Shown: positions 14,043-33,350, numbered from the stretch's first letter. The stretch is DNA of 64,000 nucleotides from IMGVR_UViG_3300042879_006196:1-64000, one strand, 5' to 3'. Made by a program: numbers and translations. Notes: generated from the letters alone by a model not told the origin.

Positions 14043-14111
14043 ATCACACAATCTTAATTCAATAATTTGCCCGATTTTTTCCAGATTTAACACAATCTGA
14101 TTATAATAAAA

Positions 14112-14478: not shown

Positions 14479-17400
14479 ATGATTAATACAGATTGTGTGA
14501 AAATATATGAGGAAGAATATCAGGTGAGCAAGCAGGTGAGCCATCAGCAGGTGATGGATCGGGTGATGACTCTAGTGTGGTATCAGATTCGCCACGAGGT
14601 AGAGGATCAGGTATTAAGTGAGGTGTGGCTTAAGGTGTGGTATGATTAATACAGATTGTGTGGAAGTAAAAAAACAGGCACATAATCAGCTAAGGAATCA
14701 GGTGTTGAATCACGTGCGGTATCAGGTGTTGAATCACGTGCGGTATCAGGTGCTGAATCAGGTGTGGTATCTGGGGAGGGATCAGGTGTGGGTTAAGGTG
14801 TTTAGATGATTAATACAGATTGTGTGGAGATAAAAGATTGGGGTCATATAGAGGATCACGTGGAATATCAAACTTCGATTCAGGTATCAAATGAGGTGTG
14901 GAAGCAGGTGTATCTTCATCTGAGGAATCGAATGAAGAAAGAGATGTATTTCTACTTAAGGTGGGAGGTGTGGTTTAAGGTGTGGTTTGATTAATACAGA
15001 TTGTGTGGAGATAAAAGATTGGGGTCATATATTGGATCATGTGGAATATCAAATTTCGACTCAGGTGTCAAGTGAGGTGTGGAAGCAGGTGTATTCGCAG
15101 GTGAGAAATCAAACGATGGATGAAATGTATTTCTACGAGAGAAAACAGGTGTGGCTTAAGGTGTGGTTTGATTAATACAGATTGTGTGGAGATGTATGAG
15201 ATTAAAGATCAGGTGTGGGATAAGGTGGAGTATGAGGTTTCGATTCAAGTGAGGGATCAGGTGTGGGGTTATTTGTATTCCCTCATAAGGTACGAGGTGA
15301 GGCTTAAGGTGTGGTTTGATTAATACAGATTGTGTGGAGATAAAAGCGATTAGATATCAGGAGAGAAAACAGGTATGTGATCAGGTGAGAAATCAGGTGG
15401 GGAATGAGGTGAGGAATGAGGTGTGGCATCAGGTAGAGTATCAGGTGTGGGCAAAGGTGTGGTGGTCAGGTGAGGGGAATCACTTGAGTGATCGGATTTT
15501 CAAATGATTAATACAGATTGTTTAAAGGTGAAGGTTGAAGATCAGGTGCAGAATCAGGTGTATAATCTCCTAAGGATTCATGTGAAGCTCCAGTTGGACT
15601 ATCAGGTGTGGGATCGTTTGTTTTGGGAAATGCGGTGGAAGGTGTTCAAATGATTAATACAGATTGTGTGGAGATATTTGAGATTGAAAGTAAGGCGTAT
15701 GATCAGGTTATGGAACTGGTCTATTATCAGGTTTGGGAACAGGGGTGGTCGAGGGTAAGAGTGTATATGTGTCGTGAGGTGTTCAGATGATTAATACAGA
15801 TTGTGTGGAGATATTTAACATTAAAGATCGAGTGGGGGAGCAGGTGATATTTGAGGTGAGGATTAAGGTGGTGGATAAGGTGTTGTGGAAGGTGTATGAT
15901 TGGGCGAGGGATCAGGTAAAGGGTAAGGTAAGAGTGAAGGTGTTCAGATGATTAATACAGATTGTGTGGAAGTGAAGAATCAGGTGAAGAATCAAATGAG
16001 GAATCATGTACAGTATCATGTGCAGACTCAGGTGTATGAAAAGGTAGATTATCAGGTGTGGGATAAGGTGTGGTATCTAATGAGGAATAAGGTGATAAAT
16101 GATTGATATAGATTGTGTGGAGATATTTGAGATTAGAGATCGGGTGAAAAATCAGGTGGTGGATAAGGTGTTGTGGAAGGTGTGGTATCTGGCGAGGAAT
16201 CAGGTGAGGGGTCAGGTGTATCTAAAGGTGTGGGATAAGGTGTGTGATCAAGTTGTGTGTCAGGTGTGGCTTAAGGTGCTCAAATGATTAATACAGATTG
16301 TATGGTAGTGAAGAATCAGGTGAAGAATCAGGTGTTGGATCAGGTGAGTTATCAGGTGTGGGATCAGGTGCTGTATCAGATGTGGCATCAGGTGTATCAT
16401 CACGTGAGGGATCAGGTGTGGTATCAAGTGGAGGATCAGGTGTATGATAAGGTGTGGCATCCTGTGAAATATCGGGTAAAGGGTCAGGTGTTCGATGATT
16501 AATACAGATTGTTTGAAGGTGAAACATCAATTTAAGAAAGTGGAATCTCAGGTGTGGGATCAGGTGATAGATGATTAATACAGATTGTGTTGGAGTAAAT
16601 CATAAAGTATTTTTTGAGAATGTGTCCTTTGAATTGTGGCATCAGACGAGGAATAATCTAAGGTGGCAGGTGAGGAACCAGGTGTGGTTTAAGGTGTATC
16701 TTCAGGTATGGCATAAGGTGTTCAGATGATTAATACAGATTGTGTGGAGATATTTGAGAATCGAAATCAGGTGATAACTCAGTTGAGTGATCAGGTGAGT
16801 TCGAATCTGGTGCATAGTCAGGTGTGGTTTAAGGTGTTCAGATGATTAATACAGATTGTGTGGAGATATTTGAGAATCTAAATCGGGTAGAGGGTAAGGT
16901 GAGGCATCAGGCAAGAGATCAGGTGAGTAATCATGTGTGGTATAAGTTGCGGGATAAGGTGTGGTGGGAGATGTGGTGCTACGTAAGAGTGAAGGCGTGG
17001 AGGAAAATGTTCGAATGATTAATACAGATTGTGTGGAGATGTATGATAATATTGAGTTATGGTGGAAGGTGACAGATAAAGTGTATGCTGTGGCGAGGAG
17101 TCAGGTGCAGAATCAGGTATTGTTTCATACAAAGACTCATCCTAAGGTGAAACTGAAGGTGAAAGATCAGGTATATTATGAGGTGCTCAGATGATTAATA
17201 CAGATTGTGTGGAGATATTTGAGATTGAAGATCAGGGTTGGGATCAGGTGAGTGATCAGGTGAGTGATCAGGTGGAGTATCAGGTGTGGGAGCAGGTGTG
17301 GTGGAAGGTGTGGGATCAGGTGTGGTATCAGGTGTGGTATCAGGTGTGGTATCTGGCGTGGGATAAGGCGTGGGATGAGGTGATAAATGATTAATACAGA

Positions 17401-18082
17401 TTGTGTGGAGATGTATGAGATTGAAAATCAGGTGTGGGATCAGGTGAGTGATCAGGTGGAGCATCAAGTGTGGTATCAAGTGGAGCATCCTTTGTATGCT
17501 CAGGCGAGGGATCAAGTGATGAACCAGGTGTGGCTCAAGGTGTTCAGATGATTAATACAGATTGTGTTGAGATATTTGAGATTGAAGATCAGGCGTTGGA
17601 TCAGGTGAGTGATCAGGTGGAGTGGGAGGTGTGGCATCATGTGGAATATAAGGTGTGGTATAATGTGAGTAATCAGGTGAAAAACCCAGTGTGGTTTAAG
17701 GTGTTCGTATGATTAATACAGATTGTGTGGATGTGAAGGTTGAGGATCAGATTTGGCGTCAGGTGAGTTATCAGGTGGAGTGGGATACGCGGCATCATGT
17801 GGAGGTGTGGTATAATGTGAGTAAGCAGGTGAAAAACCCAGTGTGGTTTAAGGTGTTCGTATGATTAATACAGATTGTGTGGGTGTGAAGGTTGAGGATC
17901 AGATTTGGTGTCAAGTGGAAAATCAGGTGGAGTGTCAGTTGTCGTACTGGGTATGTGATGAGGTGAGATTTGATGCGGTTGATACAGTTTGGCATGAAGT
18001 GGGGTATAAGTTGTATGATCACATGGTTTTTCCAGGTTTAACATTACCCGATTATACTGGATATGATTCAAAAAAAAGATGA
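14479..18082 (+). repeat. MINTDCV micro-ORF array, block 1 (22 units by manual count)
   Basis: Repeat (A/T)TGATTAATACAGATTGTGTG at 14479, 14642, 14806, 14987, 15168, 15316, 15504, 15650, 15787, 15948, 16099, 16284, 16495, 16571, 16726, 16842, 17015, 17191, 17387, 17548, 17709, 17861; each opens a QVW-rich ORF that ends in the next repeat, except the last (17861), which runs on into the rIIA promoter. Confidence 0.95.
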
Positions 18083-20204
18083 CTTTGTAATCGACATGAA
18101 TTCCTCATTTGCACAACGAAAGTTCTCAGTTAAAACTGAGAATCTTGCTCATTTGTTCGACATAATGAGAAATTACATTTACTCAAACAAAATTCTTGCA
18201 GTTATTAGAGAGTACTCTACAAATGCAATTGATGCAAACATAAAAAATAACTTTGCATCTAGACCAATTTCAATCACATTGCCTACGTACTTCGAACCTA
18301 CATTTTCTGTAAGAGACTATGGCGCAGGTTTGAGCGAAGAAGAAATTTTTGAAATTTATTCTAGTTATGGAGAATCCACTAAAAGAGAAAGCAATGAATA
18401 CATTGGTAATCTTGGTATTGGAAGCAAATCTGGCTTCGCTTATTCTGATTCATTTACCATTACTTCATTCCATAATGGAACAAAAAAAATCTATGAAGCT
18501 TTCATTGATGAATCACAAATTGGTACAATTGCAAAAATTCATGAAGAAAAAAATGACAGTGAAAGCGGATTGTTAATATCTATTTCTGTTAATAAAAATG
18601 ACATCAATTATTTCAAAATTGAAGCAGAAAAGTTTTTCATGTGGTGGGATGTTACACCTGAATTTATTGGTGTCCAACCTGATTTTATGTCTCAATTTTC
18701 AACATACAAAAATGAATATTCTTCTAGTATTTGTCAAATCTTTTCAAAAAGATATTCTGAAACTTCAATTTCAGTTAAAATGGGTAATATTCTTTATCCA
18801 GTTACAAATTTTGATAAAATTGATTGTGATTGGTTGAAAGGTTTGTCTGTTGTCATTAAAGTAGGGCTTGGAGAAGTAAGTCACTCCGCTTCAAGAGAAT
18901 CTCTTGAAATGAATAGTTTAACTGTAGATACAATTAATACATATCTTCAAAAAATAAGAGAGACACTTACAGCACATTTCCTGAAGCAAATTGATGATTG
19001 CAAAACACCTTGGGGCGCAATCATAGAATATCATAATATGTCTTTTTTCGCTCAACAAACGATTGGTAAAAAAATATCTTGGAAAGGTAAAACTCTATCA
19101 ACGCAGTTACCGTCTAGTTTTCAATATTGTTTCTTTGATACATACTACAAAAAATGGAAGAAAAATGTAACTGTTCGATACTCCGCTGGAGACAGTGTGG
19201 CTTTTATTTTGAATGATGGAGGTTTTCCAGCGTCACAAACTAGAGCAAGGCTTCTAGCCGCACGTGATAAACTCAACAAGACAAACCTTTACACAAGTAT
19301 CATTTACATAAAAGGTTCAATCTCAGACACAAATGATTTACTAAAAAGTGACGAATTGATTGGATCAAATTATGTCAAGCTTTCAACGGTATTAGCAATT
19401 CCTACTAAAAATAAAAGTAAAAAAGCTGTTGCTGGAAAGATTCTTGAATGGAATTCCACAACAACATTTCCATACTCTACTTGCTGGGACTCTGTAGATA
19501 TACCAGACAGTGATGAAGAAATGATTTATGTTGAGATTGAAAAATTTGTGCCTGTCATGAGCAATTTTAATAACAGTAGCCGAGCGAGGTTTTATGATCT
19601 TAAAAATTGTTTGAATTTGATTCGTGATGTGGATAATAAAGTTTTCAAAATTTACGGAGTAAAAGCTGGTCAAAAATTACCTAAAAATTTTATTAGTCTG
19701 CATGATTACATGGAAAGGATGATTGTAAAATTCATTAAAACAGACGATTTTGTTGATAGTTATGTTCAACATGCAATTAGTCAAGTTAATTTAAGAACAT
19801 CATTCTTGAGTAGTGCAAGAACTCTAATGCAAACATTTGATACTGATATAATGAACAAATTCAATGATGTAAAATGCGAAAAGCTCAAGGCAATGTTTTA
19901 CTTTACTAAGCCTATGATGAATAAATTTTATCATCTTTTGACGAACATAAAAAACATTTCATTTCATTTTCCTAAAATAACCACTGCCTTGTCAGAGTTG
20001 GATGATTTGAAAGACAAAAGATTACAAGTTTGGAATCAAAACAAAAATTATTGTTTGGAAAATTATCCAATGATTGAATTTCATTATTCTCCAAACACTA
20101 TGGCTTTGACAAAAATGTTTGAATATGTAAATTCAATTCACGCAACACAAAACACTGAGAGGCACAAAAAGCCAATCAAAATTTCATCAAAAATTAATGT
20201 TTGA
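18063..20204 (+). CDS. rIIA: rIIA-like protein (N-terminal GHKL ATPase)
   Basis: Y.NK..AVIRE...NA.DA, F.VRDYG.GLS, YG.STKR.SN..IG.LG.GSKS.FAYSDSF, S.SRESL. Confidence 0.9.
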   Translation: MIQKKDDFVIDMNSSFAQRKFSVKTENLAHLFDIMRNYIYSNKILAVIREYSTNAIDANIKNNFASRPISITLPTYFEPTFSVRDYGAGLSEEEIFEIYSSYGESTKRESNEYIGNLGIGSKSGFAYSDSFTITSFHNGTKKIYEAFIDESQIGTIAKIHEEKNDSESGLLISISVNKNDINYFKIEAEKFFMWWDVTPEFIGVQPDFMSQFSTYKNEYSSSICQIFSKRYSETSISVKMGNILYPVTNFDKIDCDWLKGLSVVIKVGLGEVSHSASRESLEMNSLTVDTINTYLQKIRETLTAHFLKQIDDCKTPWGAIIEYHNMSFFAQQTIGKKISWKGKTLSTQLPSSFQYCFFDTYYKKWKKNVTVRYSAGDSVAFILNDGGFPASQTRARLLAARDKLNKTNLYTSIIYIKGSISDTNDLLKSDELIGSNYVKLSTVLAIPTKNKSKKAVAGKILEWNSTTTFPYSTCWDSVDIPDSDEEMIYVEIEKFVPVMSNFNNSSRARFYDLKNCLNLIRDVDNKVFKIYGVKAGQKLPKNFISLHDYMERMIVKFIKTDDFVDSYVQHAISQVNLRTSFLSSARTLMQTFDTDIMNKFNDVKCEKLKAMFYFTKPMMNKFYHLLTNIKNISFHFPKITTALSELDDLKDKRLQVWNQNKNYCLENYPMIEFHYSPNTMALTKMFEYVNSIHATQNTERHKKPIKISSKINV

Positions 20205-20474
20205 ATGACTTAGTTACCAACATGCAGAAAATTTAATCATGAAGTTTTTCAATAAATTCTTCTCACTGATTCAGATTGTGTGCATGTTGGTAATTTTGCC
20301 TTTTGCATTCTTTTACTTAACTATTTTAGATTTTTTGGATTACCAAAAATCAAAAAAAATGTAACTATTCTTGAATAGTTATCGTAAATAAAATTGTATT
20401 ATAGATTGAATCTTTTATAGAATTAGTGTGTAATACATTTTTTCCAGGTTTAACAAAACAGGATTATAATTAAC

Positions 20475-21569
20475 ATGGTTGAACAATTAACACAAGAACA
20501 AATAGACAGTTTTCCACGATTCAGAGATAAGTGGACAAACATCGGACGATCCACTGGCAGAGCTGACCTTTCAGTTGTAAAGCCAATTATCAACAAAATT
20601 TATGAGCAGAAAGATCTTGAAGCTCCAAAGTACTTCTTCCATTTTGGCAATCCGATGGATATGCTCAATGGACGAGTGATTTGCAGAATGCTCAACAGTT
20701 TTGATCCAAAAAATTATCAGAAAGATACAATCAATCTTGATAATGACTTCATGCGTATCTTTGATATGACCTATCAAATGTATTCTGAACAATTCGATTT
20801 GAAATCTGCACATGGTGTGGATTGGAGCGAAGACATCAAGCTTGGAATGCTTTCACATTGCCAAAATCTTTTGAAGTCTAAAAACATGCTTGCATACAGA
20901 AAAGAACTGGAAACTGATGTTCTTTATGGCAACCATGAAGCACACAATCTGGCTTACTACGAATTCTGGGACGAATGGTTCAAATTTGACTTCTTAAAGC
21001 CAATGCATGCATTTTTTGAACTCGCTAACCATCTTGGATGGTGGTGTGCTGAAAAAGAAGTGGCATATTTGTCAGACAAACCTGATGAAGTGCACGTGGA
21101 TGAACTAGGTAGACTTCACAACACCGCAGGACCAGCTGTCAAATACAGAGATGAATTCTCAATCTACTGCATCGAAAGCCATAGCGTTCCTGCCCACGTG
21201 GTAGAGGCACCAGACACAATTACAGTTGAAGAAATTGATTCTCAAACAAACGCTGAAGTTAGAAGAATTTTTATGACACAATTTGGATTCGAAAGATATT
21301 TCCAAGAAGCAAATTGTCAAATTATTGACCAGGATTTTACTGTTGTTGATTATAACAAACAAGAATCTATGCCAAGAATGCTCGTAAAAACTAAATTTGA
21401 TGATGTGTATTTGATCGGAACTGATGGCTCCACAAATCGTGTTTACTACATGCCAATTGGTAATGTAACCACAATCAAAGAAAGATTGGGTGTGAACATC
21501 AAAACCTGTAAGCAAGCACATGAAATCATTTCAGGTGTGAAAGAATCAAATATCATTTCGCAAAGCTAA
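20475..21569 (+). CDS. DUF6745-like protein
   Basis: N-terminal LT.EQ....R.KW..IG.ST..AD; C-terminal LH...GPA..Y.D.......VP..VV..P..IT...I....NAEVRR..M...G.ERY; recognised from memory. Confidence 0.75.
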   Translation: MVEQLTQEQIDSFPRFRDKWTNIGRSTGRADLSVVKPIINKIYEQKDLEAPKYFFHFGNPMDMLNGRVICRMLNSFDPKNYQKDTINLDNDFMRIFDMTYQMYSEQFDLKSAHGVDWSEDIKLGMLSHCQNLLKSKNMLAYRKELETDVLYGNHEAHNLAYYEFWDEWFKFDFLKPMHAFFELANHLGWWCAEKEVAYLSDKPDEVHVDELGRLHNTAGPAVKYRDEFSIYCIESHSVPAHVVEAPDTITVEEIDSQTNAEVRRIFMTQFGFERYFQEANCQIIDQDFTVVDYNKQESMPRMLVKTKFDDVYLIGTDGSTNRVYYMPIGNVTTIKERLGVNIKTCKQAHEIISGVKESNIISQS

Positions 21570-21599
21570 TATGTATAATAAATAACAAGGATAAAAAAA

Positions 21600-22037
21600 A
21601 TGACAAAAACCATTAAAAAAACCAAAGCTCAGAATAACCTTTCTGAAATTCAACAATTCGCCACTAAATCTAGCAACGATTGTCGCATCATTGACAAAAT
21701 TGAAGTGGGGCAGTGCGTGAGACAAGGGGATGTTTACATCACCCGAATCGAAAACTTCTCGAAAGTGGGATGCACTAAAGCAGGGCAAAAACTTGCTCCT
21801 GGTGACACCCCTGGCTCAAGACATTTTGTAGATGCACACGTTACTACTTGGCAAAATGAAAACACTGGAAAAGTTGTGCGAAATGAAGTGGGATTCACAT
21901 GTAAAGGATTGCTCCTTGAATGCGATAGAAGCTTCAAGGTCACACACCCTGAACATGCCCATTTCTATCTCCCTGCTGGCTCTTATGAAGTGAGCTATCA
22001 AGTTAACACCAAAGAAATGGCTAGAGTACTTGATTAA
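21600..22037 (+). CDS. Conserved small partner of DUF6745-type genes
   Basis: RQGDV, LA.G...G.RH, .THPEH....LP.G.YEV..Q, terminal RV.D. Confidence 0.7.
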   Translation: MTKTIKKTKAQNNLSEIQQFATKSSNDCRIIDKIEVGQCVRQGDVYITRIENFSKVGCTKAGQKLAPGDTPGSRHFVDAHVTTWQNENTGKVVRNEVGFTCKGLLLECDRSFKVTHPEHAHFYLPAGSYEVSYQVNTKEMARVLD

Positions 22038-22078
22038 AATCTAAAAACAACACACTCACATCTTTTCCAAAAACACCG

Positions 22079-22113
22079 AAGAGGACAATTCAAATATTGT
22101 CCTCTTTATTTTT
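22079..22113 (+). terminator. Intrinsic terminator closing the DUF6745 operon
   Basis: AAGAGGACAAT...ATTGTCCTCTT followed by a T-run. Confidence 0.8.
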
Positions 22114-22164
22114 CAATTTTTGCCCGATTTTTTCCAGATTTAACAATTATTATTTATATTAAAA

Positions 22165-25100
22165 ATGATCAACACAGATTGTGCGGAAGTAAATGAAAAA
22201 GTGAATCCTATACAGCATCATGCAATTAATCAAGTACAGTATGAATTGGAGATTGAAGTTTGGGATATGGTAAAATGTAAGGTATCAGGTGAGGTAAGTT
22301 GTCAGGTGTTCGATTGATTAATACAGATTGTGTGAAAGTGGAACATCCAGTGTGGACTCAAGTGCGAGATCAGCTGTTCTCTCAGGTGCAGTGGAAGGTG
22401 TGCCATAACGTGCTGACTCAGGTGGAGTGGAAGATGCATGATCAGGTGTGGTGGAAGGTGTTCGATTGATTAATACAGATTGTGTTAAGGTGTGGGAGAA
22501 AAAGGATAAGGTGAGGGGTCAGGTGTGTTATCAAGTGATGGGTCAGGTAGAAGATCAGGTGCATGGTCCTTTGTTTCGGGAAATGTGGTGGCAGGTGTGG
22601 TTTGAGGTTTTCAAATGATAAATACAGATTGTGTGAAGGTGAGGGAGAAAAAGATTCAGGAGTGCGATCAGGTGTATGAGCAGGTGTATGAGCAGGTGTA
22701 TTGTCAGGTGAGTAATCATGTGGAGTATCAGGTGTGGGAGCAGGTGTGGTGCAAGGTATGTAAAAAAGTGTGGTTTAAGGTCTATAATGATTAATACAGA
22801 TTGTGTGGAGGTGAGGGAGAAAAAGAATCAGGCGACTGAGCAGGTGTATGAGCAGGTGTGTGAGCAGGTGGGGTGGAATGTGGAGTATCAGGTGTGGGAG
22901 CAGGTAGAAGATCAGGTGTGGGATCGTTTGTTTTGGTACTCGCGCTTTGAGGTGTTCAAATGATTAATACAGATTGTGTGGTGAAGAAGCAGGTGTGGGA
23001 GTATGTAGAAAGTCAGGTGTTGTGGAAGGTGTATGATTGGGTGAGTGAGCAGGTGAATTGGCAAGTGGAGATTCAGTTGTGGGATAAGCTGTTTGCTCAG
23101 GAAAGACATCAGGTACGGCATCAGGTAAAAGTGAAGGTGTTCAAATGATTAATACAGATTGTGTGGAAGTTGAAAGCCATGTGAAGAATCAGGGGTTTGA
23201 TCAGGTGTGGAATCAGGTGGAACTTCAGGTGTGGGGTCAGGTGTGGGATTATTTGTGGTGGAAGGTGTGGCTTGAGGTGTTCGAATGATTAATACAGATT
23301 GTGTGTATGATTGGGTGAGTGGTGATTGGGTGAGTGATCAGGTGGAGCTTCATGTGAGGAATCAAGTGCGGGGTCAGGTGTGGGGTCAGGTGTGGGATAA
23401 GGTGCGGGATCAGGTGGAGTATCAGGTGTGGGAGCAGGTGTGGTTTGAGGTGCTCAGATGATTAATACAGATTGTGTGGAAGATCAGGTGGAGTATCAGG
23501 TGGAGTATCAGGTGGAGCTTCAGAAGTGGGGTCAGGTGTGGGATGAGGTGTGGTGGAAGGTGTGGCTTGAGGTAAGTGATCAAGTAAGGGATCAGGTGTT
23601 TTATAAGGTGTGGTTTGAGGTGTTCTATGATTAATACAGATTATGTGGTAAATAAGCAGGTGTGGTGGCATGCAGAAGATCAGGTGTTTTCGAATATGCG
23701 TGATTGGGTGTGGTGGCATGTAGAAGATCAGGTGTATGATCAGGTAAGGATATTGGTGCAGATTCATGTGTGGGATCAGGTGGGGGGTCAGGTGTATGAC
23801 CAGGTGTTCTATGATTAATACAGATTGTGTGAAGGTAAAGAAGCAGGTGTGGGAGCATGTAGAAAATCAGGTGTGGTTTGAGGTGTATGATTGGGTGAGT
23901 GAGCAGGTGAATTGGCAAGTGGAGATTCAGTTGTGGGATGAGGTGTTGTATCAGGTGTTGTGGATTAAGGTGTTTAGATGATTAATACAGATTGTGTGAA
24001 GATAAAAAATCAAATGTATGATCAGGTGGAGTGGAAGGTGTATGATCAGGAGTGGTGGTATCGGGTGAGCATTCTAGTGTTGGATCAGTTGGAGTATAAG
24101 GTGTGTAATCAGGTGTGGTGGGAGGTGTATAAGGGTGTGTGGCAGGTGTTAAAATGATTAATACAGATTGTGTGGAAGATCAGGTGTGGGATCAGGTGGA
24201 GCTTCAGGTGTGTAATCATGTGTGGTATCATGTGAGGTATCAGGCGTCTCAGCAGTTGGGGGTTAAGGTGAGAGGTCAGGTGAAATACAAGGTGAGGTAT
24301 CATGTGAGAGATCAAGTGGTGTGTGAGGTGTGGTATGATTAATACAGATTGTGTCAAGGTGAGGGAGCAAGATAAGGTGTGGGATCAGGTGTGGTGGAAG
24401 GTGCTCAAATGATTAAAACAGATATTGTGAAAGTGAAACGTGAAAATCAAATGTGTTTTAAGATTTATCACAATTTGGAACAACAAGTGCACTGGAATAT
24501 ACTTTATCTGGTGAAAGCTCAAACGAAAAATAGACTTTTTGCACAGAAGAATCTGCTGGGTAGGATTGTAGATCGCGAGATCAAAAGGCGCTCAAATGAT
24601 TAATACAGATTGTGTGGTTGTGTGGAATCAGGTGAGACATCAGGTACGGCATCAGGTAAAAGTGAAGGTGTTCAAATGATTAATACAGATTGTGTGGAGG
24701 TATGTGAGATTAATCATGTATGGACTCAGGTGAATTATAAGGTGACACATCAGGTGAAGAGAGTGGCATCTCAGGTTCACTCTGAGGTGAGACATCAGGT
24801 ACGGCATCAGGTGTGGTGTGAGGTAGAGGATCAGGTGGAGTGGAATGTGTGGAATAAGGTGCTGGGTCAGGTGTGGAATCAGGTGAGGATTCAGGTGTGG
24901 TATGATTAATACAGATTGTGTGGAAGATCAGGTGTGGGATCAGGTGGAGCTTCAGGTGTGTAATCAGGTGAGGTATCAGGTGAGGTATCAGGTGAGGGTT
25001 CAGGTGTGTGATAAGGTGAGGGGGAGGTGGTGCTACGTAAGAGTGAAGGTGTTGTTTAAGGTGTTCAGATGATTAATACAGATTGTGTGGAAGATCAGGT

Positions 25101-27430
25101 GTGGGATCAGGTGGAGCTTCAGGTGTGTAATCAGGCGAGGTATCAGGTGAGGTATCAGGTGAGGGAGGAGGTGTCTGATAAGGTGAGGGGTCAGGTGAGA
25201 TATAAGGTGAGGCATCATGTGAGAGATCAGGTGGTGTGTGAGGTGTTCTATGATTAATACAGATTGTGTAAAGGTGAGGGAGCAAGATAAGGTGTGGAAT
25301 CAGGTGCAGGATCATGTGTGGTTTGAGTTGTGGTATAAGGTGCGGGATCAGGTGAAGATTGAGGTGAGGTTTCAGGTGTGGGTTCAGGTGTTCAAATGAT
25401 AAATACAGATTGTGTGGAAGTGGAAGATGATTCAAATTTGACTAAAATGAAACATGTGTTGACTCATGTGCGCGATAGGGTGGAGGTTAGGGTGTGGTTT
25501 GCGGTGTCGGCTCTTGTGGAATGTCGGTATTGGTATGAAGTAAGAGATAATGTGTTCTAATGATTAATACAGATTGTGTGGAAGTGAAACATCCAGTGTG
25601 GGGTGAGGTGAGGGAACAGGCAAGGGTTACAATAGTTTATCATTTGTGGCATCAGGTGTGGTACCAGGTTGCGTGGGATGTAGAGGATCAGGTGTTGGAT
25701 CAGGTGTGGAATCAGGTGTTCTAATGATTAATACAGATTGTGTGGTAGCGAAGAATCTGGTGCGGAATCAAATGAGGAATCATGTACAGTATCAGGTGCA
25801 GACTCAGGTGTATGAAAAGGTAGATTATCAGGTGTGGGATAAGGTGCGATGGAAGGTGTATGCTCAGGTGCGGGATAAGGTGTTTAGATGATTAATACAG
25901 ATTGTGTGGAAGTGAGGGAGCGGGATCAGGCGTGGAAAAAAGTGCAGAATCATGTGTGGAATCAGGTGCAGGATCATGTGTGGTTTGAGTTGTGGTATAA
26001 GGTGCGGGATCAGGTGAAGATTGAGGTGTGGAATAGGGTGTGGTGGAAGGTGTTCAAATGATAAATACAGATTGTGTGAAAGATCAGGTGTGGAATCAGG
26101 TGTGGAATAAGGTGTTGAATCAGGCGTGGGGTCAGGTGGAGTATCAGGTGGAGATTCAGGTGTGGGATCAGGTATGGATTCAGGTATGGAAGGTGTGTTG
26201 TAAAATACAGAATCAGGTGTGGCATGATTAATACAGATTGTGTGGATGTATGTGATAATAATTATCAGTTTTGGTATGTAGTGTCTCAGGTTCAGGTTGA
26301 GGCAAATCAGGTGGAGATTCAGGTGTTTAGACAAGTGAGGAAACTAACGTGGGCTCAGGTAAGATATCAGGTGACACACAAGGTAATTGATCAGGTGTGG
26401 TATGATTAATACAGATTGTGTGAAAGATCAGGTGTGGAATAAGGCGCTGGATCAGAAGTGGGGTCAGGTGAGGAAACAGGTGTGTGAGCATGTATGGGAT
26501 CAGGTGTGGAATAAGGTGTGGGATCGTTTGTTTTGGGTAAGATTCAAGGTGAAGTATCAGGTGTGGCATGATTAATACAGATTGTGTGAAAGTGAGTGAG
26601 TGTGATAAGGTGCAGGATCAGGTGAGACAGCAGATGCGGGATCAGGTGAAAGATCAGGCGTTGAAGGGGTTTATTCAGGTATATTGGCAGGTGAGTAATC
26701 AGGTGGAGTATAAGGTGTGGGAGAAGGTGATCAAACAGGTACGACTTCAGGTGTGGTATGATTAATACAGATTGTGTGAAAGAGCAGGTGTGGAATAAGG
26801 TGCTGGGTCAGGTGAGATACAAGGTGAGGTATCAGGTAGAGGATAAGGTGGAGTGGAAGGTGTTAAATCAGGTATATGATAAGGTGTTTAAATTGAATTA
26901 TAAGGTGTTGAAAAAGGTGTTCAGATGATTAATACAGATTGTATAGAGATATTTGAGATTGAAGATCAGGCGTTGGATCAGGTGAGTGATCAGGTGGAGA
27001 TGGAGGTGAGGTATCAGGTGAGATATAAGGTGAGGCATCATGTGAGAGATCAGGTGTGGTGTGAGGTGTTCTATGATTAATACAGATTGTATAGAGATAT
27101 TTGAGATTGAAGATCAGGCGTTGGATCAGGTGAGTGATCAGGTGGAGATGGAGGTGTGGCATCATGTGTTGGATCAAGTTGTGGGTGAGGTGTGGTATCA
27201 GGTGTGGTATCAGGTGAATTATCAGGTGTGGTATGATTAATACAGATTGTGTGAAAGTGAAACGTGAAGATCAATTGTGTTTTAAGATTTATTATAATTT
27301 CGATCATAAAATGCACTGGGAGATGATGTATCAAGCGCATTACAAACCCCAATATCAAGCAGAATATTATTTATGCTGTAATATTTACAATAAAGGATGG
27401 AAGCAGATAACAGAGCAGATATTCAAATGA
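22165..27430 (+). repeat. MINTDCV micro-ORF array, block 2 (32 units by manual count)
   Basis: Repeats from 22165 to 27233 at about 75-230 bp spacing; first ATG lies directly behind the promoter at about 22126-22160. Confidence 0.95.
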
Positions 27431-27968
27431 TGAATCACTTCAAAGATTCCTTTTTTATGAAACATCCCACTGGACTCCGCGACAAAAAATGATCCCTCTT
27501 TAATGCAGAATAAAACACCTTTTCATCACCCTTTTTGTACCCCACACCTGACCAAAAACAAGGCTTCACACACACTAATTTATATGCCTTTCTGTTCATT
27601 TTTTACTCTATGAATTCCTATATGAACACACAATCTGAAACACGATCTCTATATCCCTAATACAATTAAGATACAATTAAAAAATCACATATTCATTATG
27701 CATTTTTTTCACCTTCCACCACCTCAAATGATAAAAAAAAAATTACACAAGATATATATGATTTTTTTCAATTTTTTCTACTCTATGAAAAATTAATGAG
27801 ATTTTTTGTCAAATCATTTTTCATCTCTGAAAAAATCATATCATTTTCTCTTTCTATTTTTTTCTGATTTTCGCCCGATTTTTCCTCATCAATTTTGCCC
27901 GATTTTTTCCAGTTTTAACATTTTCTTTTTATAATGTTTCCAAGACAAATTTCGTAGAATGTAGTGGT

Positions 27969-30900
27969 ATGATTAATATACATAATGTAGAATTGAATGA
28001 CAAGGATTACATAAAAATAAAAGATTTCATTTCTTCCCATGTAAATGAAAATGTCTGGTTTCGTGTGAATGATCAAGTGAGGAAATATTTCTGCCATAAA
28101 CACAGAGGTAAAATTTATAAGAGGATGTTCAAATGATTAATATAGATTGTGTGAAGGTATTTGATATGAAACAGGTGTGGGATGAGCTGACTTTTCAAGT
28201 GAGTGATCCAGTGGATAAGCATGTGCTGTCTGACGTGTGGTATCAAGTGAGGGATAAGGTGTGGATTCAGGTACGATTTAAGGTGTGGATTAGGGTGTTG
28301 TTATGGTTAATACAGATTGTGTGAAGGTGAGGGTGCTGAATCAGGTGAGTGATCAGGTGCGGGATCAAGTGAACTATCCAGAGGCAAATCATGTGCTGTC
28401 TGACGTGTGGCATCAAGTGAGGGATCAGGTGTGGATTCAGGTACGATTTAAGGTGTGGATTAGGGTGTTATGGTTAATACAGATTGTGTGAAGGTATTTA
28501 ACCTAATACAAGCGTGGGATGAACTAACAACTTATCAGGTAAGGTATTCAGTGAAATATCATGTGCTGCATAATCTCTGGTATGAAGTGGGGGCTGGGGT
28601 GAAGATTGAGGTGAGGCATAAGGTGTGGTTTGATTAATACAGATTGTTTGAAGTAAAAGTGATTAGATATCAGGTAAGTGATAAGTTGTGGGAGTTGGTG
28701 ATCAGACAGGTATGGAATCAGGTGAGGTATAATGGTCGGTGGCATCAGGTAGAGGGGAGGGTGCGGGATCGGTTGTTCAAATGATTAATACAGATTGTGT
28801 GGAAGTGAATTATAGGGGGTGGATTCAGGTACGATTTAAGGTGTGGTTTGAGGTGAGAGATCGGGTGTGGCTTGAGGTAAGTGAACATCCAGTGTGGAGT
28901 CAAATTTTTTTCCATCAGGTGTTTGAAAAGGTGGAGTGCGAAGTGTGGTATGATTAATATAGATTATGTGAGGGTGAGGAATCAGGTGGGTGAGCAGGTG
29001 AGCTGTCAGGTGTGGAATCAGGTGTTTGAGCATTTAGAAGATCAGGTAGAGTATCAAGTGTATAATCAGATTTTGTCTGAGTTGCATGATCAGTTGTATT
29101 ATAAGGACTGGGAGGTGTGTTATAAAATACGGCAAAAGGTGTGGTATGATTAATACAGATTGTGTGAAAGTGGAGAATCATGGTTGTTGGCAGTTTAGGG
29201 ATCAGGTGTGGTATCAAGTGGAGCAACAGGTGTGGCACAAGGTGTCTAATGGGGTTCGGGATAGGGTGTGGATTAAGGTGTTCAGATGATTAATACAGAT
29301 TGTGTGAAGGTATTTGAACTAAATCAATTGTGGAATCAAGTGAGTGATCAGGTGGAGTGGAAGGTGCGTGATGAGGTAGAGTATAAGGTGTGGCTTCAGG
29401 TAAGATACAAGGTGTGGGATCAGGTGCAGTTTTGGGTAAGATTCAAGGTGAAGTATCAGGTGTGGCATGATTAATACAGATTGTGTGGAAGTGAAACATC
29501 CAGTGTGGACTCAGGTGCAGAATCAGGTATATTGGCAGGTGAGTAAACAGGCATGTCATAAGGTGGAGTGGAAGGTGTGGCATAAGGTGTGTAGTGGGGT
29601 GCGGGAATGGGTTGTGTATCAGGTGTGGGATCGGGTTGTGTATCTAACGTTAAATGATTAATACAGATTGCGTGAAGGTATGTGAGATTAATCATGTATG
29701 GACTCAGGTGAATTATAAGGTGACACATCAGGTGAAAAGAGTGGCATCTCAGGTTCGCTTTGAGGTGATGAGTCAGGTGTGGGATCAGGTGTATTGGATG
29801 ATGTGGCAAAAGGTGGTGTGGTATGATTAATACAGATTGTGTGGAAGTGGAACATAAAGTGTTGGAGACGATGTGGTATCATATGTGGGAAAAGGTGTGC
29901 TATGGGCTGATATTTCAGGTATGTAGTGAAGTGAGGCTTAAAGTGAGGCTTAAGGTTTTTGTTTGAGGTGTGGTATGATTAATACAGATTGTGTGGAGAT
30001 GGTGCGTCCAGTGTGGACTCAGGTTCGAAATCAACTGTTTACTCAGGTGCAGAATCAGGTAGATCATAAGGTGAGGGCTCAGGTGTTCTTGAACGTGTGG
30101 TCTAAGGTGTGGGATCAGGGGTGGTATCAGGCGTGGGATAAGGTGATAAATGATTAATACAGATTTTGTGGAAGTGAAAAATCAAATGTGGGGTGAGGTG
30201 AGGGATCATGCGTGGTTGAAGGTGTGGTATCTGGCGAGGAATCAGGTGAGGAACCAGGTAAATGATCAGGTAAGTGGTGAGGTGATTAGTCTGCTTGTGT
30301 ATCAGGTGTGGCATCAGGTGTTGTATCAGTTGACTGATATGGTTTGGAATAAGGTGATAAATGATTAATACAGATTGTGTGGAAGTGAAAAATCATCCAC
30401 ATATGCAGGTAAGACAGCAGATGAGACACAGGGCGTGGTTTCAGGTGTGGAATCAGTTGGTTCCTATGGTTTGTGATCATGTGTGGAAGCACATGTATAT
30501 TCAGGTGCAAATTCAAGTGTTGGATAAAGTGATGTATGGATTGTATGAAGAAGGTGAACAATCAGGTGTGGCATGATTAATACAGATTATGTGGGCTTAC
30601 TCGGAGCGGCAAAAACTCAGGCTCAAAATGAAATTAACAGTATTGTGCAACTTGAAGTGTGGGAGAAGGTGATCAGTCAGGCATGGCTTAACACGTGGCA
30701 AAAGGTGTGGTATGATTAATACAGATTGTGTGAAAGTGGGGAATCCAGTGGGGAATCAGTTGGGGTTTGAGGTGAATTTTCAGGCGAGGTGGCAAGTGAT
30801 GTCTCATGTGGAATATGTGGTGCGGCATGATGTGAGGGATCAGCTGGAGTGCAAAGTTTGGTATATGTGGTGGAAGGTGTGCAAATGATTAATACAGATT

Positions 30901-33178
30901 GTGTGAAAGTGGAAAATCAAGTGTTTAATGAGGTGCAGAATCAGGTGTGGTGGAAGGTACATGCTCAGGTGTTCCGTAAGCTGAGAGGTAAGGAATGGTT
31001 GGCTGAGTTGTGGCAACAGAAAACATATGTTGTCACGTATCAGAATCAGGTTCTACTTAAAGTAAAACTTCAGGTGTGGTATGATTAATACAGATTGTGT
31101 GGAATTGTATAATGAGGTTTCGAATCAAGTGAGGGATCAGGCGTGGGCTCATGGACTTCAGGCGTGGTGGCAAGTGAGGAATAAGATAAGGTATCAGCCT
31201 TGGCATCAAATTAGTAGGAAGGTGAGAAAACAGGTATGGTATGAGGTGTGGTATGATTAATACAGATTGTGTGAAAGTGTATAATGAGGTGCAGAATCAA
31301 GTGAGGGATCATGTGTGGATTAATACAGATTGTGTTAATACAGATTATGTTGAATTGTATTATGAGGTTTCGATTCAAGTGAGGGATCAGGTGTGGTATC
31401 AGGCGTGGGATAAGGTTTGGGATCAAGTGAGGAATAAGATGAAGTATCAGGCTTGGCATCAAATTAGTAGGAAGGTTAGAAAACAGGTATGGTTTGAGGT
31501 GTAGTATGATTAATACAGATTTTGTGAAAGTGGAAATTTGGGTGTGGGATCAGCTAAAGAATCATGTGAAAAATGAATTTAGTAGTGAAGTGTGGCAACA
31601 GGTAAATGTTAGGATGTGCGATCAGGTGTGGGAGAAGGTGATCAGACAGGTACGATATAAGGTGTGGTATGATTAATACAGATTGTGTGAAGATATATAA
31701 TAGTAAAAATCCAATGATTGATCATATGTGGGATCTAGTGACAACCCAATCGTTTTATGAGTTTTTGAATTATGTGCTTTTCAAGGTAAAGAGACAGATA
31801 TGGAATAAGGTGTGGCTTGAGGTGTTCAAATGATTAATACAGATTGTGTGGAATTGAGCCATCACGCGCTGGATCAAGTGAGCAACAATACGCGGTATCA
31901 GCTGGAGTGGAAGGTATGGGCTCATGTGGATCATGCGGTAAAACAGATTGGTTTGCCGTTTAAGGTAAAGTTGCAGGTATGGAATAAGGTGATAAATGAT
32001 TAATACAGATTGTGTAAGGAATAAGATGAAGCAGAAGCACTTGGATTTTAGACATCAAACGCAAAAGTATGTATGGGCTAACTTTATATTAGGGCTTGAG
32101 TATCGTGTGAGACTTAATGTCTGTAGTAAGCTTACGAGTCAGATATATTATCAGGTGAGTGTATATATTTATAATAAGGTGTATGATGATTAATACAGAT
32201 TGTGTGCAGATAAATGATGATGAATATCAGGTAAAAAGTCAGAAGTATAAACATATATCTAATGAGATGTATCTTGAGGTGTGGTATGAGATGTCTCAAA
32301 AAGTATTATATTTTTCTGTGCGTGAGTTGTGCATTAAGGTGTTTAGATGATTAAAATAGATTGTGTGGAGATTAAGGTTCAACATCACATTTGTCTTGTG
32401 CACATTCATGTTTCTAATCAGGCTTATCAGGTGTGGGACAAGAATTGTAAAGGAGTGTGTTTTCCAAGGCGTCAGTTGTGGTTTGAGGTGTTTAGATGAT
32501 TAAAACAAATTGTGTGGAGATTAAGGTTCAAGATCAGATTTGGTTTGTGGATCATTATTTGTCCAATGAAATGTGGTGTCAGGCTTTGAACAATACAGTG
32601 CTTTGGGCAATTCCTAATGTGGTAATTTATAATGTGCGCGATAAAGCTTGGATCAAGGTGTTTAGATGATTAACACAGATTGTGTGAGAGTGGACAGTCT
32701 TGAAATAAAGCATGAAGTTGTTTTTGAGATGAGGAATAAAGTGTGGAATCAAATATATTATCATGTGTCTTGTAAGGTTTGGAGGCTGGTAAAGCTTCAG
32801 GTGTTTGGGTGTTCAGATGATTAATACAGATCGTGTGGATTTGAAAAATCATGATAATCTACATTATCATCTTACTAATTCACCAAGATGGTATGTGTGG
32901 GATCAAATTAATCTTCAAGTGAGGAATCATGTTTCTAAGGTAAGGTTTAAGTTGTGGGATGAGATGTTAAAATGATTAATACAGACTGTGTGAATATAAG
33001 GAATGGTGAAAAAATCCAAATGGATTTGCAGAACCATGTGGATATAGTTGATATCCATTCTGTTCGAAATTCTATTTATTATCAAGTAAGAAGATTAAGT
33101 AATGTAACTTTGATAAGATATAAATTACAAAAGATTTTTTTTGATTATTTGTCTTATGATTTATGTGGGATATTGTGA
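27969..33178 (+). repeat. MINTDCV micro-ORF array, block 3 (30 units by manual count)
   Basis: Repeats from 27969 to 32972; promoter at about 27903-27935; first and last units are the most diverged. Confidence 0.95.
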
Positions 33179-33350
33179 AAAAAAGTGGGAATCAGATTGT
33201 GTTAGATTGTGGTAAATTTATGGATAAAAAGTGGGAATTAGATTGTGTTAGATTGTGGTAAATTTATGGATAAAAAGTGGGAATTAGATTGTGTTAGATT
33301 GTGGTAAATTTATGGATAAAAAGTGGGAATTAGATTGTGTTAGATTGTGT
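33179..33350 (+). repeat. 46-bp tandem repeat, about 3.6 copies
   Basis: GTGGGA at 33185, 33231, 33277 and 33323; each unit carries two AGATTGTG. Confidence 0.92.

What the first reader, a model, noticed from the sequence alone, without database searches (positions are those of the whole stretch)
14479..33000. The junction ATGATTAA is a start codon plus stops in both other frames
Seen: the first 8 nt of the repeat read ATG in frame 0, TGA in frame +1 and TAA in frame +2. Both stops are used: ...AGA TGA gives a 4-nt overlap (e.g. 14806) and ...TAT GAT TAA gives an 8-nt overlap (e.g. 14642). A TAATG variant occurs at 25560 and 25724. A Shine-Dalgarno-like AAGGTG or GAGGTG lies about 5-8 nt upstream. 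Inference: an upstream unit arriving in either non-zero frame, including after a shuffling indel, terminates and re-initiates at the next head. This makes the polycistron tolerant of rearrangement and translationally coupled over kilobases.
Basis: partly seen in the sequence, partly recalled or inferred. Interest (0 to 1): 0.75.

Follow-up and report, generated by a model that had tools for sequence, protein, structure and literature searches.

The report
Phage array of 83 overlapping mini-genes
A 347-kb lake-water phage carries 83 head-to-tail mini-genes, each ending inside the start signal of the next; they are a fast-changing expansion of a helical "QV-repeat" module that most related phages keep fused to a DUF6745 protein, and the start-plus-two-stops junction is real but looks mostly like a by-product of ordinary overlapping-gene coupling.

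Summary
A 21-24 nt head (ATGATTAA...) occurs about 83 times on the + strand, only between 14479 and 33178 of a 347-kb jumbo phage. The upstream frame stops inside the next head in 77 of 80 junctions: 37 as ATGA, 36 as the 8-nt overlap, 2 as TAATG and 2 as a 22-nt overlap. No head spacing is a multiple of 3.

The units are real genes of about 57 aa, each predicted to form one long helix of x-Q-V-x repeats. A profile search links them to phage proteins that carry the same repeat between an N-domain and DUF6745. The window's only DUF6745 gene has no repeat and lies between the arrays. Two unrelated phage contigs show the same split arrangement, also with overlapping junctions.

Each of the three blocks starts at a promoter that sits so close to the ATG that the mRNA has little or no leader, and the blocks have no excess of internal promoter-like sites. 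This phage shows SD-like motifs mainly at overlapping starts. Serial termination-reinitiation is therefore plausible but untested.

Against a selected "fail-safe": both frames come from two native tail types, only 2 of 80 units are rescued frameshifts, the whole head is conserved rather than just the 8-mer, and AGGTG is simply the Q-V codon pair. Verdict: partly supported. The function is unknown.

The parts
14067..14111 (+). Early-type promoter motif (GCCCGATTTTTTCCAGATTTAACA ... TATAAT) whose -10 element ends 4 nt before the ATG. It heads the operon that contains block A.
   Evidence: The motif recurs at 13191, 14067, 22120, 27895, 39495, 41901, 42232, 42771 and 51235. The promoter scan also found it.
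14112..14477 (+). DUF3307 membrane protein gene. It is the first cistron, and its stop lies 1 nt before the first unit.
   Evidence: Pfam PF11750, E 2.8e-11; phrog_2470.
14479..18082 (+). Block A: 22 overlapping mini-genes (MINTDCVE head, x-Q-V-x repeats). The last unit runs into the rIIA promoter and start.
18063..20204 (+). rIIA gene with its own copy of the promoter motif at 18029-18062, embedded in the last unit.
   Evidence: phrog_612, E 1.6e-103; sequence.
20475..21569 (+). The genome's only DUF6745 gene. It has the N-domain and the DUF6745 domain but none of the Q-V repeats that homologues carry between them.
   Evidence: PF20530, E 3.6e-28; sequence; single copy in the genome; AF2 model has two confident domains and a low-confidence stretch at 81-152.
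22078..22107 (+). Terminator-like hairpin (12 pairs followed by a T run) before block B.
22120..22164 (+). Promoter motif placed directly in front of the first unit of block B.
22165..27430 (+). Block B: 32 overlapping mini-genes.
27435..27599 (-). Degenerate unit-like ORF in inverted orientation at the end of block B. It is also called as a gene in the relatives L010 and L011.
   Evidence: The likeness was judged by eye only.
27895..27935 (+). Promoter motif of block C. Here it leaves a leader of about 30 nt.
27969..33178 (+). Block C: one diverged first unit (27969-28136) followed by 29 overlapping mini-genes.
30361..30576 (+). Unit with an internal frameshift. It has an 8-nt-type tail, but the frame arrives shifted and is stopped by the head's TGA instead (it ends ...EEGEQSGVA).
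28133..28491 (+). Two units whose downstream heads read ATGGTTAA (the TGA is lost). The upstream frames run 22 nt into the next unit.
31253..31504 (+). In-frame fusion of two units. An internal head remnant lies at 31316 with its ATG changed to TGG.

Best explanation
The region is an extreme tandem expansion of one small phage gene family: 83 copies in three operons, about 14 kb or 4% of the genome.

What each gene encodes. Each copy encodes a protein of about 57 aa with a fixed N-terminus (MINTDCV), a variable run of x-Q-V-x tetrapeptide repeats predicted to form one long alpha-helix, and one of two fixed C-terminal tails.

Where the module comes from. The repeat is the same module that most related phage proteins carry inside one polypeptide, between an N-domain and a DUF6745 domain. 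Here, and independently in at least two other phage lineages, that module has been split off. It is encoded as free mini-genes next to a DUF6745 gene that lacks repeats. I infer that the mini-proteins work together with, or in place of the missing segment of, the DUF6745 protein. The biochemical role is unknown.

How it is expressed (inferred). Each block is transcribed from one early-type promoter that leaves little or no leader. Ribosomes translate the first cistron, terminate at a stop inside the next head (ATGA, ATGATTAA or TAATG) and reinitiate on the spot. The conserved AGGTG 4-5 nt upstream and the A/U-rich head probably help.

How it evolves (shown). Units change by 12/24-nt repeat slippage and by recombination between units, for which the identical 21-24-nt heads offer homology. 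Close strains therefore differ by whole-unit replacement, gain and loss.

The junction. The start-plus-two-stops property comes from the head codons ATG-ATT-AAT and from two inherited tail types. It incidentally catches rare frameshifts. It is probably not the reason the head is conserved.
For: Coding:
- The ATG frame is open to the next head in 75 of 80 units, while the other two frames carry 316 and 339 stops over the same codons.
- AGGTG is in the Q-V register in 392 of 400 cases.
- Strain indels are mostly 12, 24 or 15 nt.

One family confined to this locus.

Fold: AF2 with the 74-paralogue alignment gives a single helix over residues 4-61, pLDDT 88.

Link to DUF6745:
- A profile of the units finds 1366 proteins. 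The best (E 4e-48 to 1e-30) are 370-590 aa and match several times over the repeat positions.
- 6 of the 10 hits scanned against Pfam carry DUF6745.
- Atlas clusters of these proteins are 81-95% viral.
- In homologues Q-V is encoded by CAA-GTA or CAA-GTC/GTT, so the motif is conserved at protein level.
- The window's single DUF6745 gene has no repeats and lies between blocks A and B.

Same split elsewhere:
- Among 120 viral loci with period-4 Q-V coding, 19 DUF6745 genes contain the repeat and have no mini-gene array nearby.
- The only 2 repeat-less DUF6745 genes (L020, L091) are exactly the loci with adjacent tandem Q-V mini-ORFs. Those arrays have different heads, different codons and overlaps of 17 nt (L020) or 4/8/11/14 nt (L091).

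Expression logic:
- The promoter motif sits in front of each block, with its -10 element ending 4 nt before the ATG at blocks A and B.
- Promoter-like sites inside the arrays are not enriched: 58 found against 66 in shuffles.
- SD-like motifs occur at 47% of 70 other overlapping pairs, 18% of 201 leading genes and 11% of coding background. This matches the published pattern of SD use for reinitiation only (PMC6728339).
- The terminal AGGTG is kept at 83% of heads against 36% of interior slots.
- The first 10 nt of the head are 89% A+T, against 53-62% in the flanking bins.

Evolution:
- Relative L010 is 95-99% identical in the flanks. Inside the array its units are either 88-100% identical or replaced by units only 36-68% alike, with order kept.
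- Chimeric units exist, for example 26925.
- pN/pS is 0.76 in units against 0.14 in flanking genes.
Against: - There are no transcript, ribosome or peptide data. The only 'RNA' runs look like DNA.
- pN/pS near 0.8 is compatible with weak constraint, meaning many units may be dispensable.
- The complex prediction of a unit with the DUF6745 protein gave no answer.
- The DUF6745 fold matches nothing solved, so the functional link rests on fusion/fission logic and adjacency in three lineages.
- Many viral contigs have single short Q-V ORFs with no DUF6745 gene in the fetched flank, so the association is not universal.
- The sample of loci was chosen by Q-V content, so repeat-less DUF6745 genes without arrays would not have been seen.
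- Array codon usage (CAG 83%, GTG 78%) is the reverse of the genome's (CAA 85%, GTG 21%). The third position of the Q-slot codon varies less than its first. Some RNA- or DNA-level pressure on AGGTG therefore cannot be excluded.
- The array mRNA is not less structured than the rest of the genome.
- The host is unknown, so its anti-SD sequence could not be checked.
Confidence: 0.6

Rival explanations
1. One reading: the 8-mer ATGATTAA is itself the selected device. It acts as a fail-safe that ends any incoming non-zero frame and restarts translation, which is what lets the array tolerate shuffling and indels.
For: - Both stops are used about equally: 37 four-nt and 36 eight-nt overlaps.
- Two frameshifted units are caught by the 'other' stop.
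- Units are demonstrably shuffled.
- Heads of two independent arrays also carry stops in both other frames: L091 ATGAATGA, and L020/L129 ATGA plus TAA at +14.
- Only 5% of this phage's gene starts have both stops within 8 nt.
Against: - 78 of 80 units reach their stop in the native Q-V register through two inherited tail types.
- Indels between strains are mostly multiples of 12, so frames rarely change.
- Conservation is uniform over 21 nt, not peaked on the 8-mer.
- Heads lacking one stop persist (ATGATAAA x3, ATGGTTAA x2) and are simply paired with the fitting tail or read on for 22 nt.
- In-frame fusions occur (31253; one in L010).
- 52% of genes start ATGA. Once one overlap type is given, the second stop is close to a coin toss.
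Confidence: 0.2
2. The array is largely selfish or neutral. It is a run-away tandem amplification driven by unequal crossing-over at identical heads. The mini-proteins have little function, and the open frames persist only because the copies are young or are homogenised.
For: - pN/pS is 0.76.
- Very short, fused and frameshifted units exist (8-27 aa units; 31253; 30361).
- Unit content differs between close strains.
- The codon pair is homogeneous and unlike the genome's, which suggests amplification from one seed.
Against: - 75 of 80 frames are intact although paralogues are only 22-65% identical to the reference unit (alignment A1), so the copies are not young.
- The phage with its array is found in 18 or more lake metagenomes.
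- rIIA has its own promoter, so block A is not kept open merely to feed it.
- The same split architecture arose in other lineages.
Confidence: 0.13
3. The primary function lies in the nucleic acid. About 400 phased AGGTG (or ATCAGGTG) motifs on a G-rich, C-poor strand act as a ribosome/anti-SD sponge, a Chi-like or protein-binding array, or a DNA-modification target. The ORFs are secondary.
For: - AGGTG occurs at 18-37 per kb against 0.85 per kb elsewhere, with spacings of 12, 24 and 36 nt and no CACCT on the + strand.
- Codon choice is reversed relative to the genome.
- K and E variants of the Q slot keep the AG (AAG 121, GAG 48 against AAA 20, GAA 15).
- GC skew reaches 0.6.
Against: - Homologous repeats elsewhere use CAA-GTA or CAA-GTC and contain no AGGTG. 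The L020 array has none either.
- One frame is open in 75 of 80 units while the other two are closed.
- No Rfam family matched beyond tRNAs.
Confidence: 0.05
4. The units are silent donor cassettes for recombinational variation of an expressed Q-V repeat protein, in the manner of antigenic variation.
For: Units are mosaic and hypervariable and share boundary sequences.
Against: - Every unit has its own start, stop and upstream motif.
- The genome's only DUF6745 gene has no repeat tract to receive cassettes.
- The head pattern occurs nowhere else in the genome.
Confidence: 0.02

Closest known systems
Translational coupling of co-directional overlapping genes by termination-reinitiation (ATGA, TGATG; Huber et al. 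2019, PMC6728339)
   Same: Overlaps of 4 and 1 nt. An SD-like motif lies in the 3' end of the upstream gene. The genome largely lacks SD at leading genes but has it at overlapping genes, the published 'third pattern' seen in cyanobacteria and haloarchaea.
   Different: The chains here run to 22-32 cistrons rather than pairs. Half the junctions use an 8-nt overlap. The first cistron starts with little or no leader. Coupling itself is untested here.
Phage and cyanobacterial DUF6745 (PF20530) proteins with an internal x-Q-V-x tetrapeptide repeat tract
   Same: The same 4-residue repeat, matched at E down to 4e-48. They are mostly viral. A DUF6745 gene lies inside the locus.
   Different: In those proteins the repeat is one tract of 8-59 Q-V inside a 300-590 aa polypeptide. 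Here it is cut into 83 separate ORFs, each with its own 7-residue head, and the DUF6745 gene has no repeat. The family has no described function, and no paper in the library mentions it.
Q-V mini-gene arrays beside repeat-less DUF6745 genes in other viral contigs (L020, L091; also L129)
   Same: Tandem ORFs of 50-100 aa made of Q-V repeats, with a conserved head and tail, overlapping stop/start, and a repeat-less DUF6745 gene next door.
   Different: They have 4 to about 20 units rather than 83. The heads differ (ATGACCTCACAAAATAA; ATGAATGA). The codons differ (CAA-GTC in L020). L020 has no SD-like motif.
Hyperplastic early regions of T4-like phages near rIIA/rIIB (from general knowledge, not tested here)
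   Same: The array sits between rIIB and rIIA among small early-type genes, all on one strand, with many ATGA overlaps.
   Different: Those regions hold many unrelated small ORFs, not one family amplified 83-fold.
CRISPR arrays and integron cassette arrays
   Same: A short conserved boundary sequence alternates with variable inserts, and content changes unit by unit between strains.
   Different: The 'spacers' are coding and related to one another. Spacing varies from 74 to 253 nt. The boundary has no dyad symmetry. No cas gene, integrase or reverse transcriptase was found nearby.

Membership tests
Translationally coupled overlapping gene chain (termination-reinitiation) | Co-directional genes whose stop overlaps, or lies within a few nt of, the next start | tested here: met
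   77 of 80 junctions overlap by 1, 4, 8 or 22 nt.
Translationally coupled overlapping gene chain (termination-reinitiation) | Initiation signal for the downstream gene lies inside the upstream coding end | tested here: met
   AGGTG ends 4-5 nt before the ATG at 66 of 80 heads. The same enrichment is seen at the phage's other overlapping pairs: 47% against 18%.
Translationally coupled overlapping gene chain (termination-reinitiation) | Downstream translation depends on upstream translation | not testable with these tools
   This needs reporters or ribosome profiling. No RNA data were usable.
DUF6745-associated x-Q-V-x repeat module | Period-4 repeat with Q-V at fixed positions, recognised by a profile | tested here: met
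DUF6745-associated x-Q-V-x repeat module | Repeat lies in the same polypeptide between the N-domain and DUF6745 | tested here: not met
   The units are separate ORFs and the DUF6745 gene lacks the repeat. The same split occurs in L020 and L091.
DUF6745-associated x-Q-V-x repeat module | Physical interaction of the mini-protein with the DUF6745 protein | tested here: inconclusive
   The complex prediction scored 0.29, under the mark of 0.32, and returned 'no answer'.
CRISPR array | Near-identical repeats at regular spacing, unrelated non-coding spacers, cas genes | tested here: not met
   Spacing is 74-253 nt. The inserts are paralogous and coding. The only Cas-like hit nearby is below Pfam's cut-off.
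Diversity-generating retroelement | Reverse transcriptase with a template/variable repeat pair | tested here: not met
   No RVT_1 match anywhere in the genome.
RiPP precursor peptide array | Conserved leader, variable core and adjacent modifying enzymes | tested here: not met
   The conserved N-terminus is only 7 residues. The neighbours are rIIA, rIIB, DUF3307 and DUF6745, with no recognisable modifying enzyme.
Non-coding satellite / tandem repeat | No reading-frame constraint; unit lengths spread over all three classes modulo 3 | tested here: not met
   No spacing is a multiple of 3 in 80 junctions. One frame is open and two are closed.

The most novel reading that the evidence does not exclude
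The arrays are a phage-encoded library of interchangeable single-helix Q-V mini-proteins. They act in trans with the repeat-less DUF6745 protein, as a split, multi-allelic version of a normally fused protein. Cassette recombination at the conserved heads diversifies the library, giving the phage population a fast-evolving repertoire, for example for host takeover or counter-defence. Whole blocks are expressed by a relay of 20-30 consecutive termination-reinitiation events starting from an mRNA with little or no leader.
Probability: 0.2. Interest if true: 0.85.

Novelty: new variant of a known kind. Interest (0 to 1): 0.62.

Why it matters
If the blocks are translated as inferred, they are the longest natural chains of stop/start-overlapping cistrons that I know of: 22-32 in a row, starting from an mRNA with little or no leader, in a system that otherwise barely uses SD. 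That would make them a ready-made test bed for how far termination-reinitiation can carry.

The comparison with fused proteins also gives the uncharacterised DUF6745 family its first structured hypothesis: a helical Q-V module that can be supplied in cis or in trans. It also exposes a fast-evolving, strain-variable locus in an abundant freshwater jumbo phage.

For annotation, the region shows that a run of 50-60-aa ORFs with strong G-skew and 12-nt periodicity should not be dismissed as a non-coding repeat.

Tried and rejected
- No DNA-level relatives among 50,697 GenBank phages. The head pattern is absent from other IMG/VR contigs.
- rIIA alone found no related viral loci. The nearest cultured phages are under 35% identical in rIIA.
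- The units have no Pfam, PHROG, PADLOC, NCBIfam or PDB match. Sub-threshold GvpQ, YpjP and Trigger_C hits to Q-V tracts are low-complexity noise.
- The 'SD sponge' or nucleotide-motif idea was weakened because homologues encode Q-V without AGGTG.
- The idea that C-depletion makes the mRNA unstructured is not supported: -27.0 against -24.6 kcal/mol per 150 nt for the rest of the genome.
- The tRNA-Met gene just upstream (13968-14042) is not initiator-like. The initiator-like one is at 70505.
- Ribosome hopping or read-through across heads was rejected because only the ATG frame is open inside the units.
- DGR was rejected because there is no reverse transcriptase.
- Expression evidence: the two runs labelled RNA-Seq behave like DNA and hold a 90-95% relative. 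The 'joints' seen in DNA contigs fall at repeated heads and promoter motifs and were treated as assembly-graph artefacts.
- The DUF6745 model has no solved-structure neighbour. AlphaFold DB neighbours are only other DUF6745 proteins.
Relatives cannot be drawn for a virus record. The host therefore remains inferred only. The SD pattern and the bacterial DUF6745 clusters point weakly to cyanobacteria.

Full report
WHAT IS THERE. The window is the first 64 kb of a 347,392-bp virus record (CheckV 99% complete, 33.6% G+C), with genes on the + strand in this part. The 8-mer ATGATTAA occurs 76 times against 7.9 +/- 3.0 in shuffles. Seventy-one copies are on the + strand, all between 14479 and 32972. 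It is the start of a longer head, ATGATTAATACAGATTGTGTG. That head occurs 81 times with up to 2 mismatches, nowhere else in the genome and never on the other strand. Allowing 5 mismatches to the 24-mer gives 83 unit starts plus one internal remnant.

The units form three blocks:
- Block A, 14479-18082, 22 units.
- Block B, 22165-27430, 32 units.
- Block C, 28133-33178, 29 units, preceded by a diverged first unit at 27969.

Between A and B lie rIIA, a DUF6745 gene and a 145-aa ORF. Upstream lie rIIB, a tRNA-Met gene and a DUF3307 membrane protein gene.

THE JUNCTION. Reading from each head's ATG to the first stop, the stop falls inside the next head in 77 of 80 adjacent junctions. There are 37 ATGA junctions (4 nt), 36 ATGATTAA or ATGATTGA junctions (8 nt), 2 TAATG junctions (at 25560 and 25724) and 2 junctions that run 22 nt in. 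Head spacing (median 167 nt, range 74-253) is never a multiple of 3: 38 junctions are class 1 and 42 are class 2, with p about 8e-15 for an empty class.

THE UNITS ARE GENES. The ATG frame is open through to the next head in 75 of 80 units. Over the same codons the other two frames hold 316 and 339 stops and are open in 0 and 1 of the 75 units. The interior is a 12-nt, 4-residue repeat, x-Q-V-x, usually written NAT-CAG-GTG-TGG. AGGTG stands in that register in 392 of 400 cases. Indels between orthologous units of two strains are mostly 12, 24 or 15 nt. AlphaFold2 with the 74 paralogues as alignment predicts one continuous helix over residues 4-61, pLDDT 88. Units have a median of 57 aa (IQR 52-62). 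Seventy-seven start with ATG and six with TTG.

WHAT THE UNITS ARE RELATED TO. Pfam, PHROGs, PADLOC, NCBIfam and PDB sequences gave nothing for the units. A word-based search found only four clusters from the same phage lineage. A profile of the paralogues searched against 1.84 billion representatives found 1366 proteins. The best (E 4e-48 to 1e-30) are 370-590 aa and match several times over the repeat part of the profile, not the head. Their architecture is an N-domain of about 75 aa, a long x-Q-V-x tract, then DUF6745; 6 of the 10 hits scanned against Pfam carry DUF6745. Atlas clusters of these proteins are 81-95% viral, with bacterial relatives mainly cyanobacterial.

In two such genes Q-V is written CAA-GTA, or CAA-GTC/GTT, with no AGGTG at all. 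The conserved feature is therefore the peptide, not the nucleotide word. The window's own DUF6745 gene (20475-21569) is the only one in the genome. It has the N-domain and the C-domain but no repeat. Its model has two confident domains and a low-confidence stretch where homologues carry the repeat. All small proteins among the 150 best hits begin MINTDC or MVNTDC, so they belong to this lineage.

THE SAME SPLIT ELSEWHERE. With small HMMs of the two DUF6745-protein domains, 21 loci have such a gene. Nineteen genes contain the repeat, and none of those loci has further Q-V ORFs. The two repeat-less genes are in L020 and L091, and these are exactly the loci with tandem Q-V mini-ORFs.
- L020 has four units directly downstream of the DUF6745 gene. 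The head is ATGACCTCACAAAATAA and each unit overlaps the next by 17 nt.
- L091 has about twenty units on both sides of the DUF6745 gene. Heads include ATGAATGA and overlaps are 4, 8, 11 or 14 nt.
- L129 has a further array cut by the contig end.

Heads, tails, codons and G+C differ among these lineages, so the arrangement recurs independently. By fusion/fission logic the mini-proteins and the DUF6745 protein belong to one functional unit. This is an inference. A complex prediction gave no answer, the fold has no solved neighbour, and no paper in the library mentions the family. There is also a sampling caveat: loci were chosen by Q-V content. Many contigs carry a single short Q-V ORF with no DUF6745 gene in the fetched flank.

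HOW IT IS PROBABLY EXPRESSED. A conserved motif, GCCCGATTTTTTCCAGATTTAACA followed by N11 and TTATAAT, recurs nine times in the first 52 kb. Its -10 element ends 4 nt before an ATG. That implies mRNAs with no leader or almost none. One copy precedes the DUF3307 gene that opens block A. One directly precedes the first unit of block B, after a terminator-like hairpin at 22078-22107. One precedes block C with a leader of about 30 nt. Promoter-like sites inside the arrays are not enriched: 58 against 66 in shuffles. rIIA has its own copy embedded in the last unit of block A.

Genome-wide, upstream regions of ORFs of at least 120 aa are A/T-rich and lack SD: GGAG in 8% and AGGTG in 1%. In contrast, 47% of 70 other ATGA or TAATG gene pairs have an SD-like word at -17 to -3, against 18% of 201 leading genes and 11% of coding background. 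Huber et al. 2019 describe this as the pattern in which SD serves reinitiation rather than de novo initiation, seen in cyanobacteria and haloarchaea (PMC6728339).

In the arrays, AGGTG ends 4 or 5 nt before the ATG at 66 of 80 heads, against 36% occupancy of interior slots. The first 10 nt of the head are 89% A+T, against 53-62% in the flanking bins. Serial termination-reinitiation is therefore the simplest reading. It is not shown. The two runs labelled RNA-Seq behave as DNA and hold a 90-95% relative.

HOW IT EVOLVES. The phage is present at about 99% word share in 18 lake-water metagenomes. A relative, L010, is 95-99% identical over the last units and the downstream genes. Further in, its units are either 88-100% identical to their positional counterparts or replaced by units only 36-68% alike, with unit losses and gains but the order kept. 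Within the window, units share long exact segments in mosaic fashion across blocks. For example, 26925 has the front of 17548/27073 and the back of 25069. Pooled pN/pS is 0.76 in units against 0.14 in flanking genes, though the counts are small.

All 21 head positions, including synonymous ones, are 89-100% conserved while interiors diverge. Two explanations fit: constraint on the initiation region, or homogenisation because the heads are the recombination joints. I cannot separate them.

The two stop frames are not reached by accident. They belong to two native tail types...AAG GTG TGG TAT GAT TAA and ...AAG GTG TTC AGA TGA. The two types differ by one nucleotide in length and both end in the Q-V register. 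Only units 15316 and 30361 end in a shifted register and are caught by the other stop.

Head variants that have lost one stop persist. ATGATAAA (22615, 25396, 26058) always follows a 4-nt tail. ATGGTTAA (28303, 28470) lets the upstream frame run on for 22 nt. In-frame fusions exist at 31253-31504 and once in L010. In this genome 52% of genes start ATGA. Stops in both other frames within 8 nt occur at 5% of starts, and within 17 nt at 23%.

The heads of L091 and L020 also carry stops in both frames. That is suggestive, but once one overlap is given, the other stop is close to a coin toss. So the buffering effect exists, but selection for it is not demonstrated.

OPEN POINT. Array codon usage is the reverse of the genome's: CAG 83% against CAA 85% for Q, GTG 78% against 21% for V, and AAG, GAG and AGG are likewise raised. 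K and E variants of the Q slot keep the AG. Amplification from one 12-nt seed explains much of this. Some pressure to keep AGGTG, for instance as internal SD-like sites, cannot be excluded. The array mRNA is not predicted to be less structured than other parts of the genome.

VERDICT. The region is a new, extreme variant of two known things: overlapping-gene translational coupling and phage multigene expansion. It is built from a Q-V helical module that other phages keep fused to DUF6745. The biochemical function is unknown.

Noticed in passing
window 13191, 14067, 18029, 22120, 27895, 39495, 41901, 42232, 42771, 51235: A conserved promoter-like motif (GCCCGATTTTTTCCAGATTTAACA, then N11 and TTATAAT) whose -10 element ends 4 nt before an ATG. 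This suggests a class of early mRNAs with little or no leader. 'TATAA' lies within 20 nt of 23-27% of gene starts genome-wide.
   Followed up: partly
whole genome (G000): Leading genes lack Shine-Dalgarno motifs, while 47% of overlapping gene pairs have one. Together with the cyanobacterial bias of bacterial DUF6745 proteins, this hints at a cyanobacterial or similarly SD-poor host. The host was not identified.
   Followed up: partly
G000:C1:327414-328754: A second, smaller tandem family: five units about 320 bp apart, each with ...CAGATTTGGGTGA before an ATGA overlap.
   Followed up: no
G000:C1:249796-251481; 70062-70383; 74376-74795: Other tandem repeats: a 156-bp unit x 10.8 copies (90% match), and 69/138-bp repeats.
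   Followed up: no
window 13968-14042, 48946-49180, 56829-56904; G000 171411-173310: The phage encodes 23 tRNAs. The one beside block A is an elongator-type CAT tRNA. An initiator-like tRNA (acceptor stem GCGGGG, very like E. coli tRNA-fMet) lies at 70505-70579.
   Followed up: partly
window 27435-27599 (- strand): A 54-aa ORF on the opposite strand at the end of block B looks like a degenerate inverted unit (head-like ...TTAGTGTGTGTGAAG, Q-V-type words out of frame). It is conserved in relatives L010 and L011.
   Followed up: partly
window 8361-11993: Upstream neighbours called in a sister contig include NAMPT/NAPRTase (8361-9869), a RyR-domain protein and a Mom-like protein (11127-11993).
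   Followed up: no
window 33347-33694: A 115-aa ORF just after block C has a weak Cas7-like Pfam hit (E 4.8e-4, 20 bits against a cut-off of 33). It is probably not significant.
   Followed up: no
proteins P0022, P0055: Q-V repeat tracts also occur in proteins with other domains: an S8 peptidase, and a 1629-aa sacsin-type ATPase that matches the PADLOC TmtA models (E 4e-17). The repeat is therefore a portable module, sometimes in defence-like proteins.
   Followed up: partly
loci L016, L024, L027, L040, L056, L063 and others; several GVMAG contigs: Dozens of viral contigs, including giant-virus MAG contigs, carry single short stop-to-stop frames (about 25-100 aa) with 5-19 Q-V repeats and no DUF6745 gene in the fetched flank. 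L053, L082 and L127 matched only through low-complexity QVQV or LQVG runs.
   Followed up: no
runs X19, X20: Two public runs labelled RNA-Seq hold a 90-95% identical relative of this phage, but the tool judged them to be probably DNA. Depth spikes at 13901-14300 coincide with the tRNA gene and the repeated promoter motif.
   Followed up: yes
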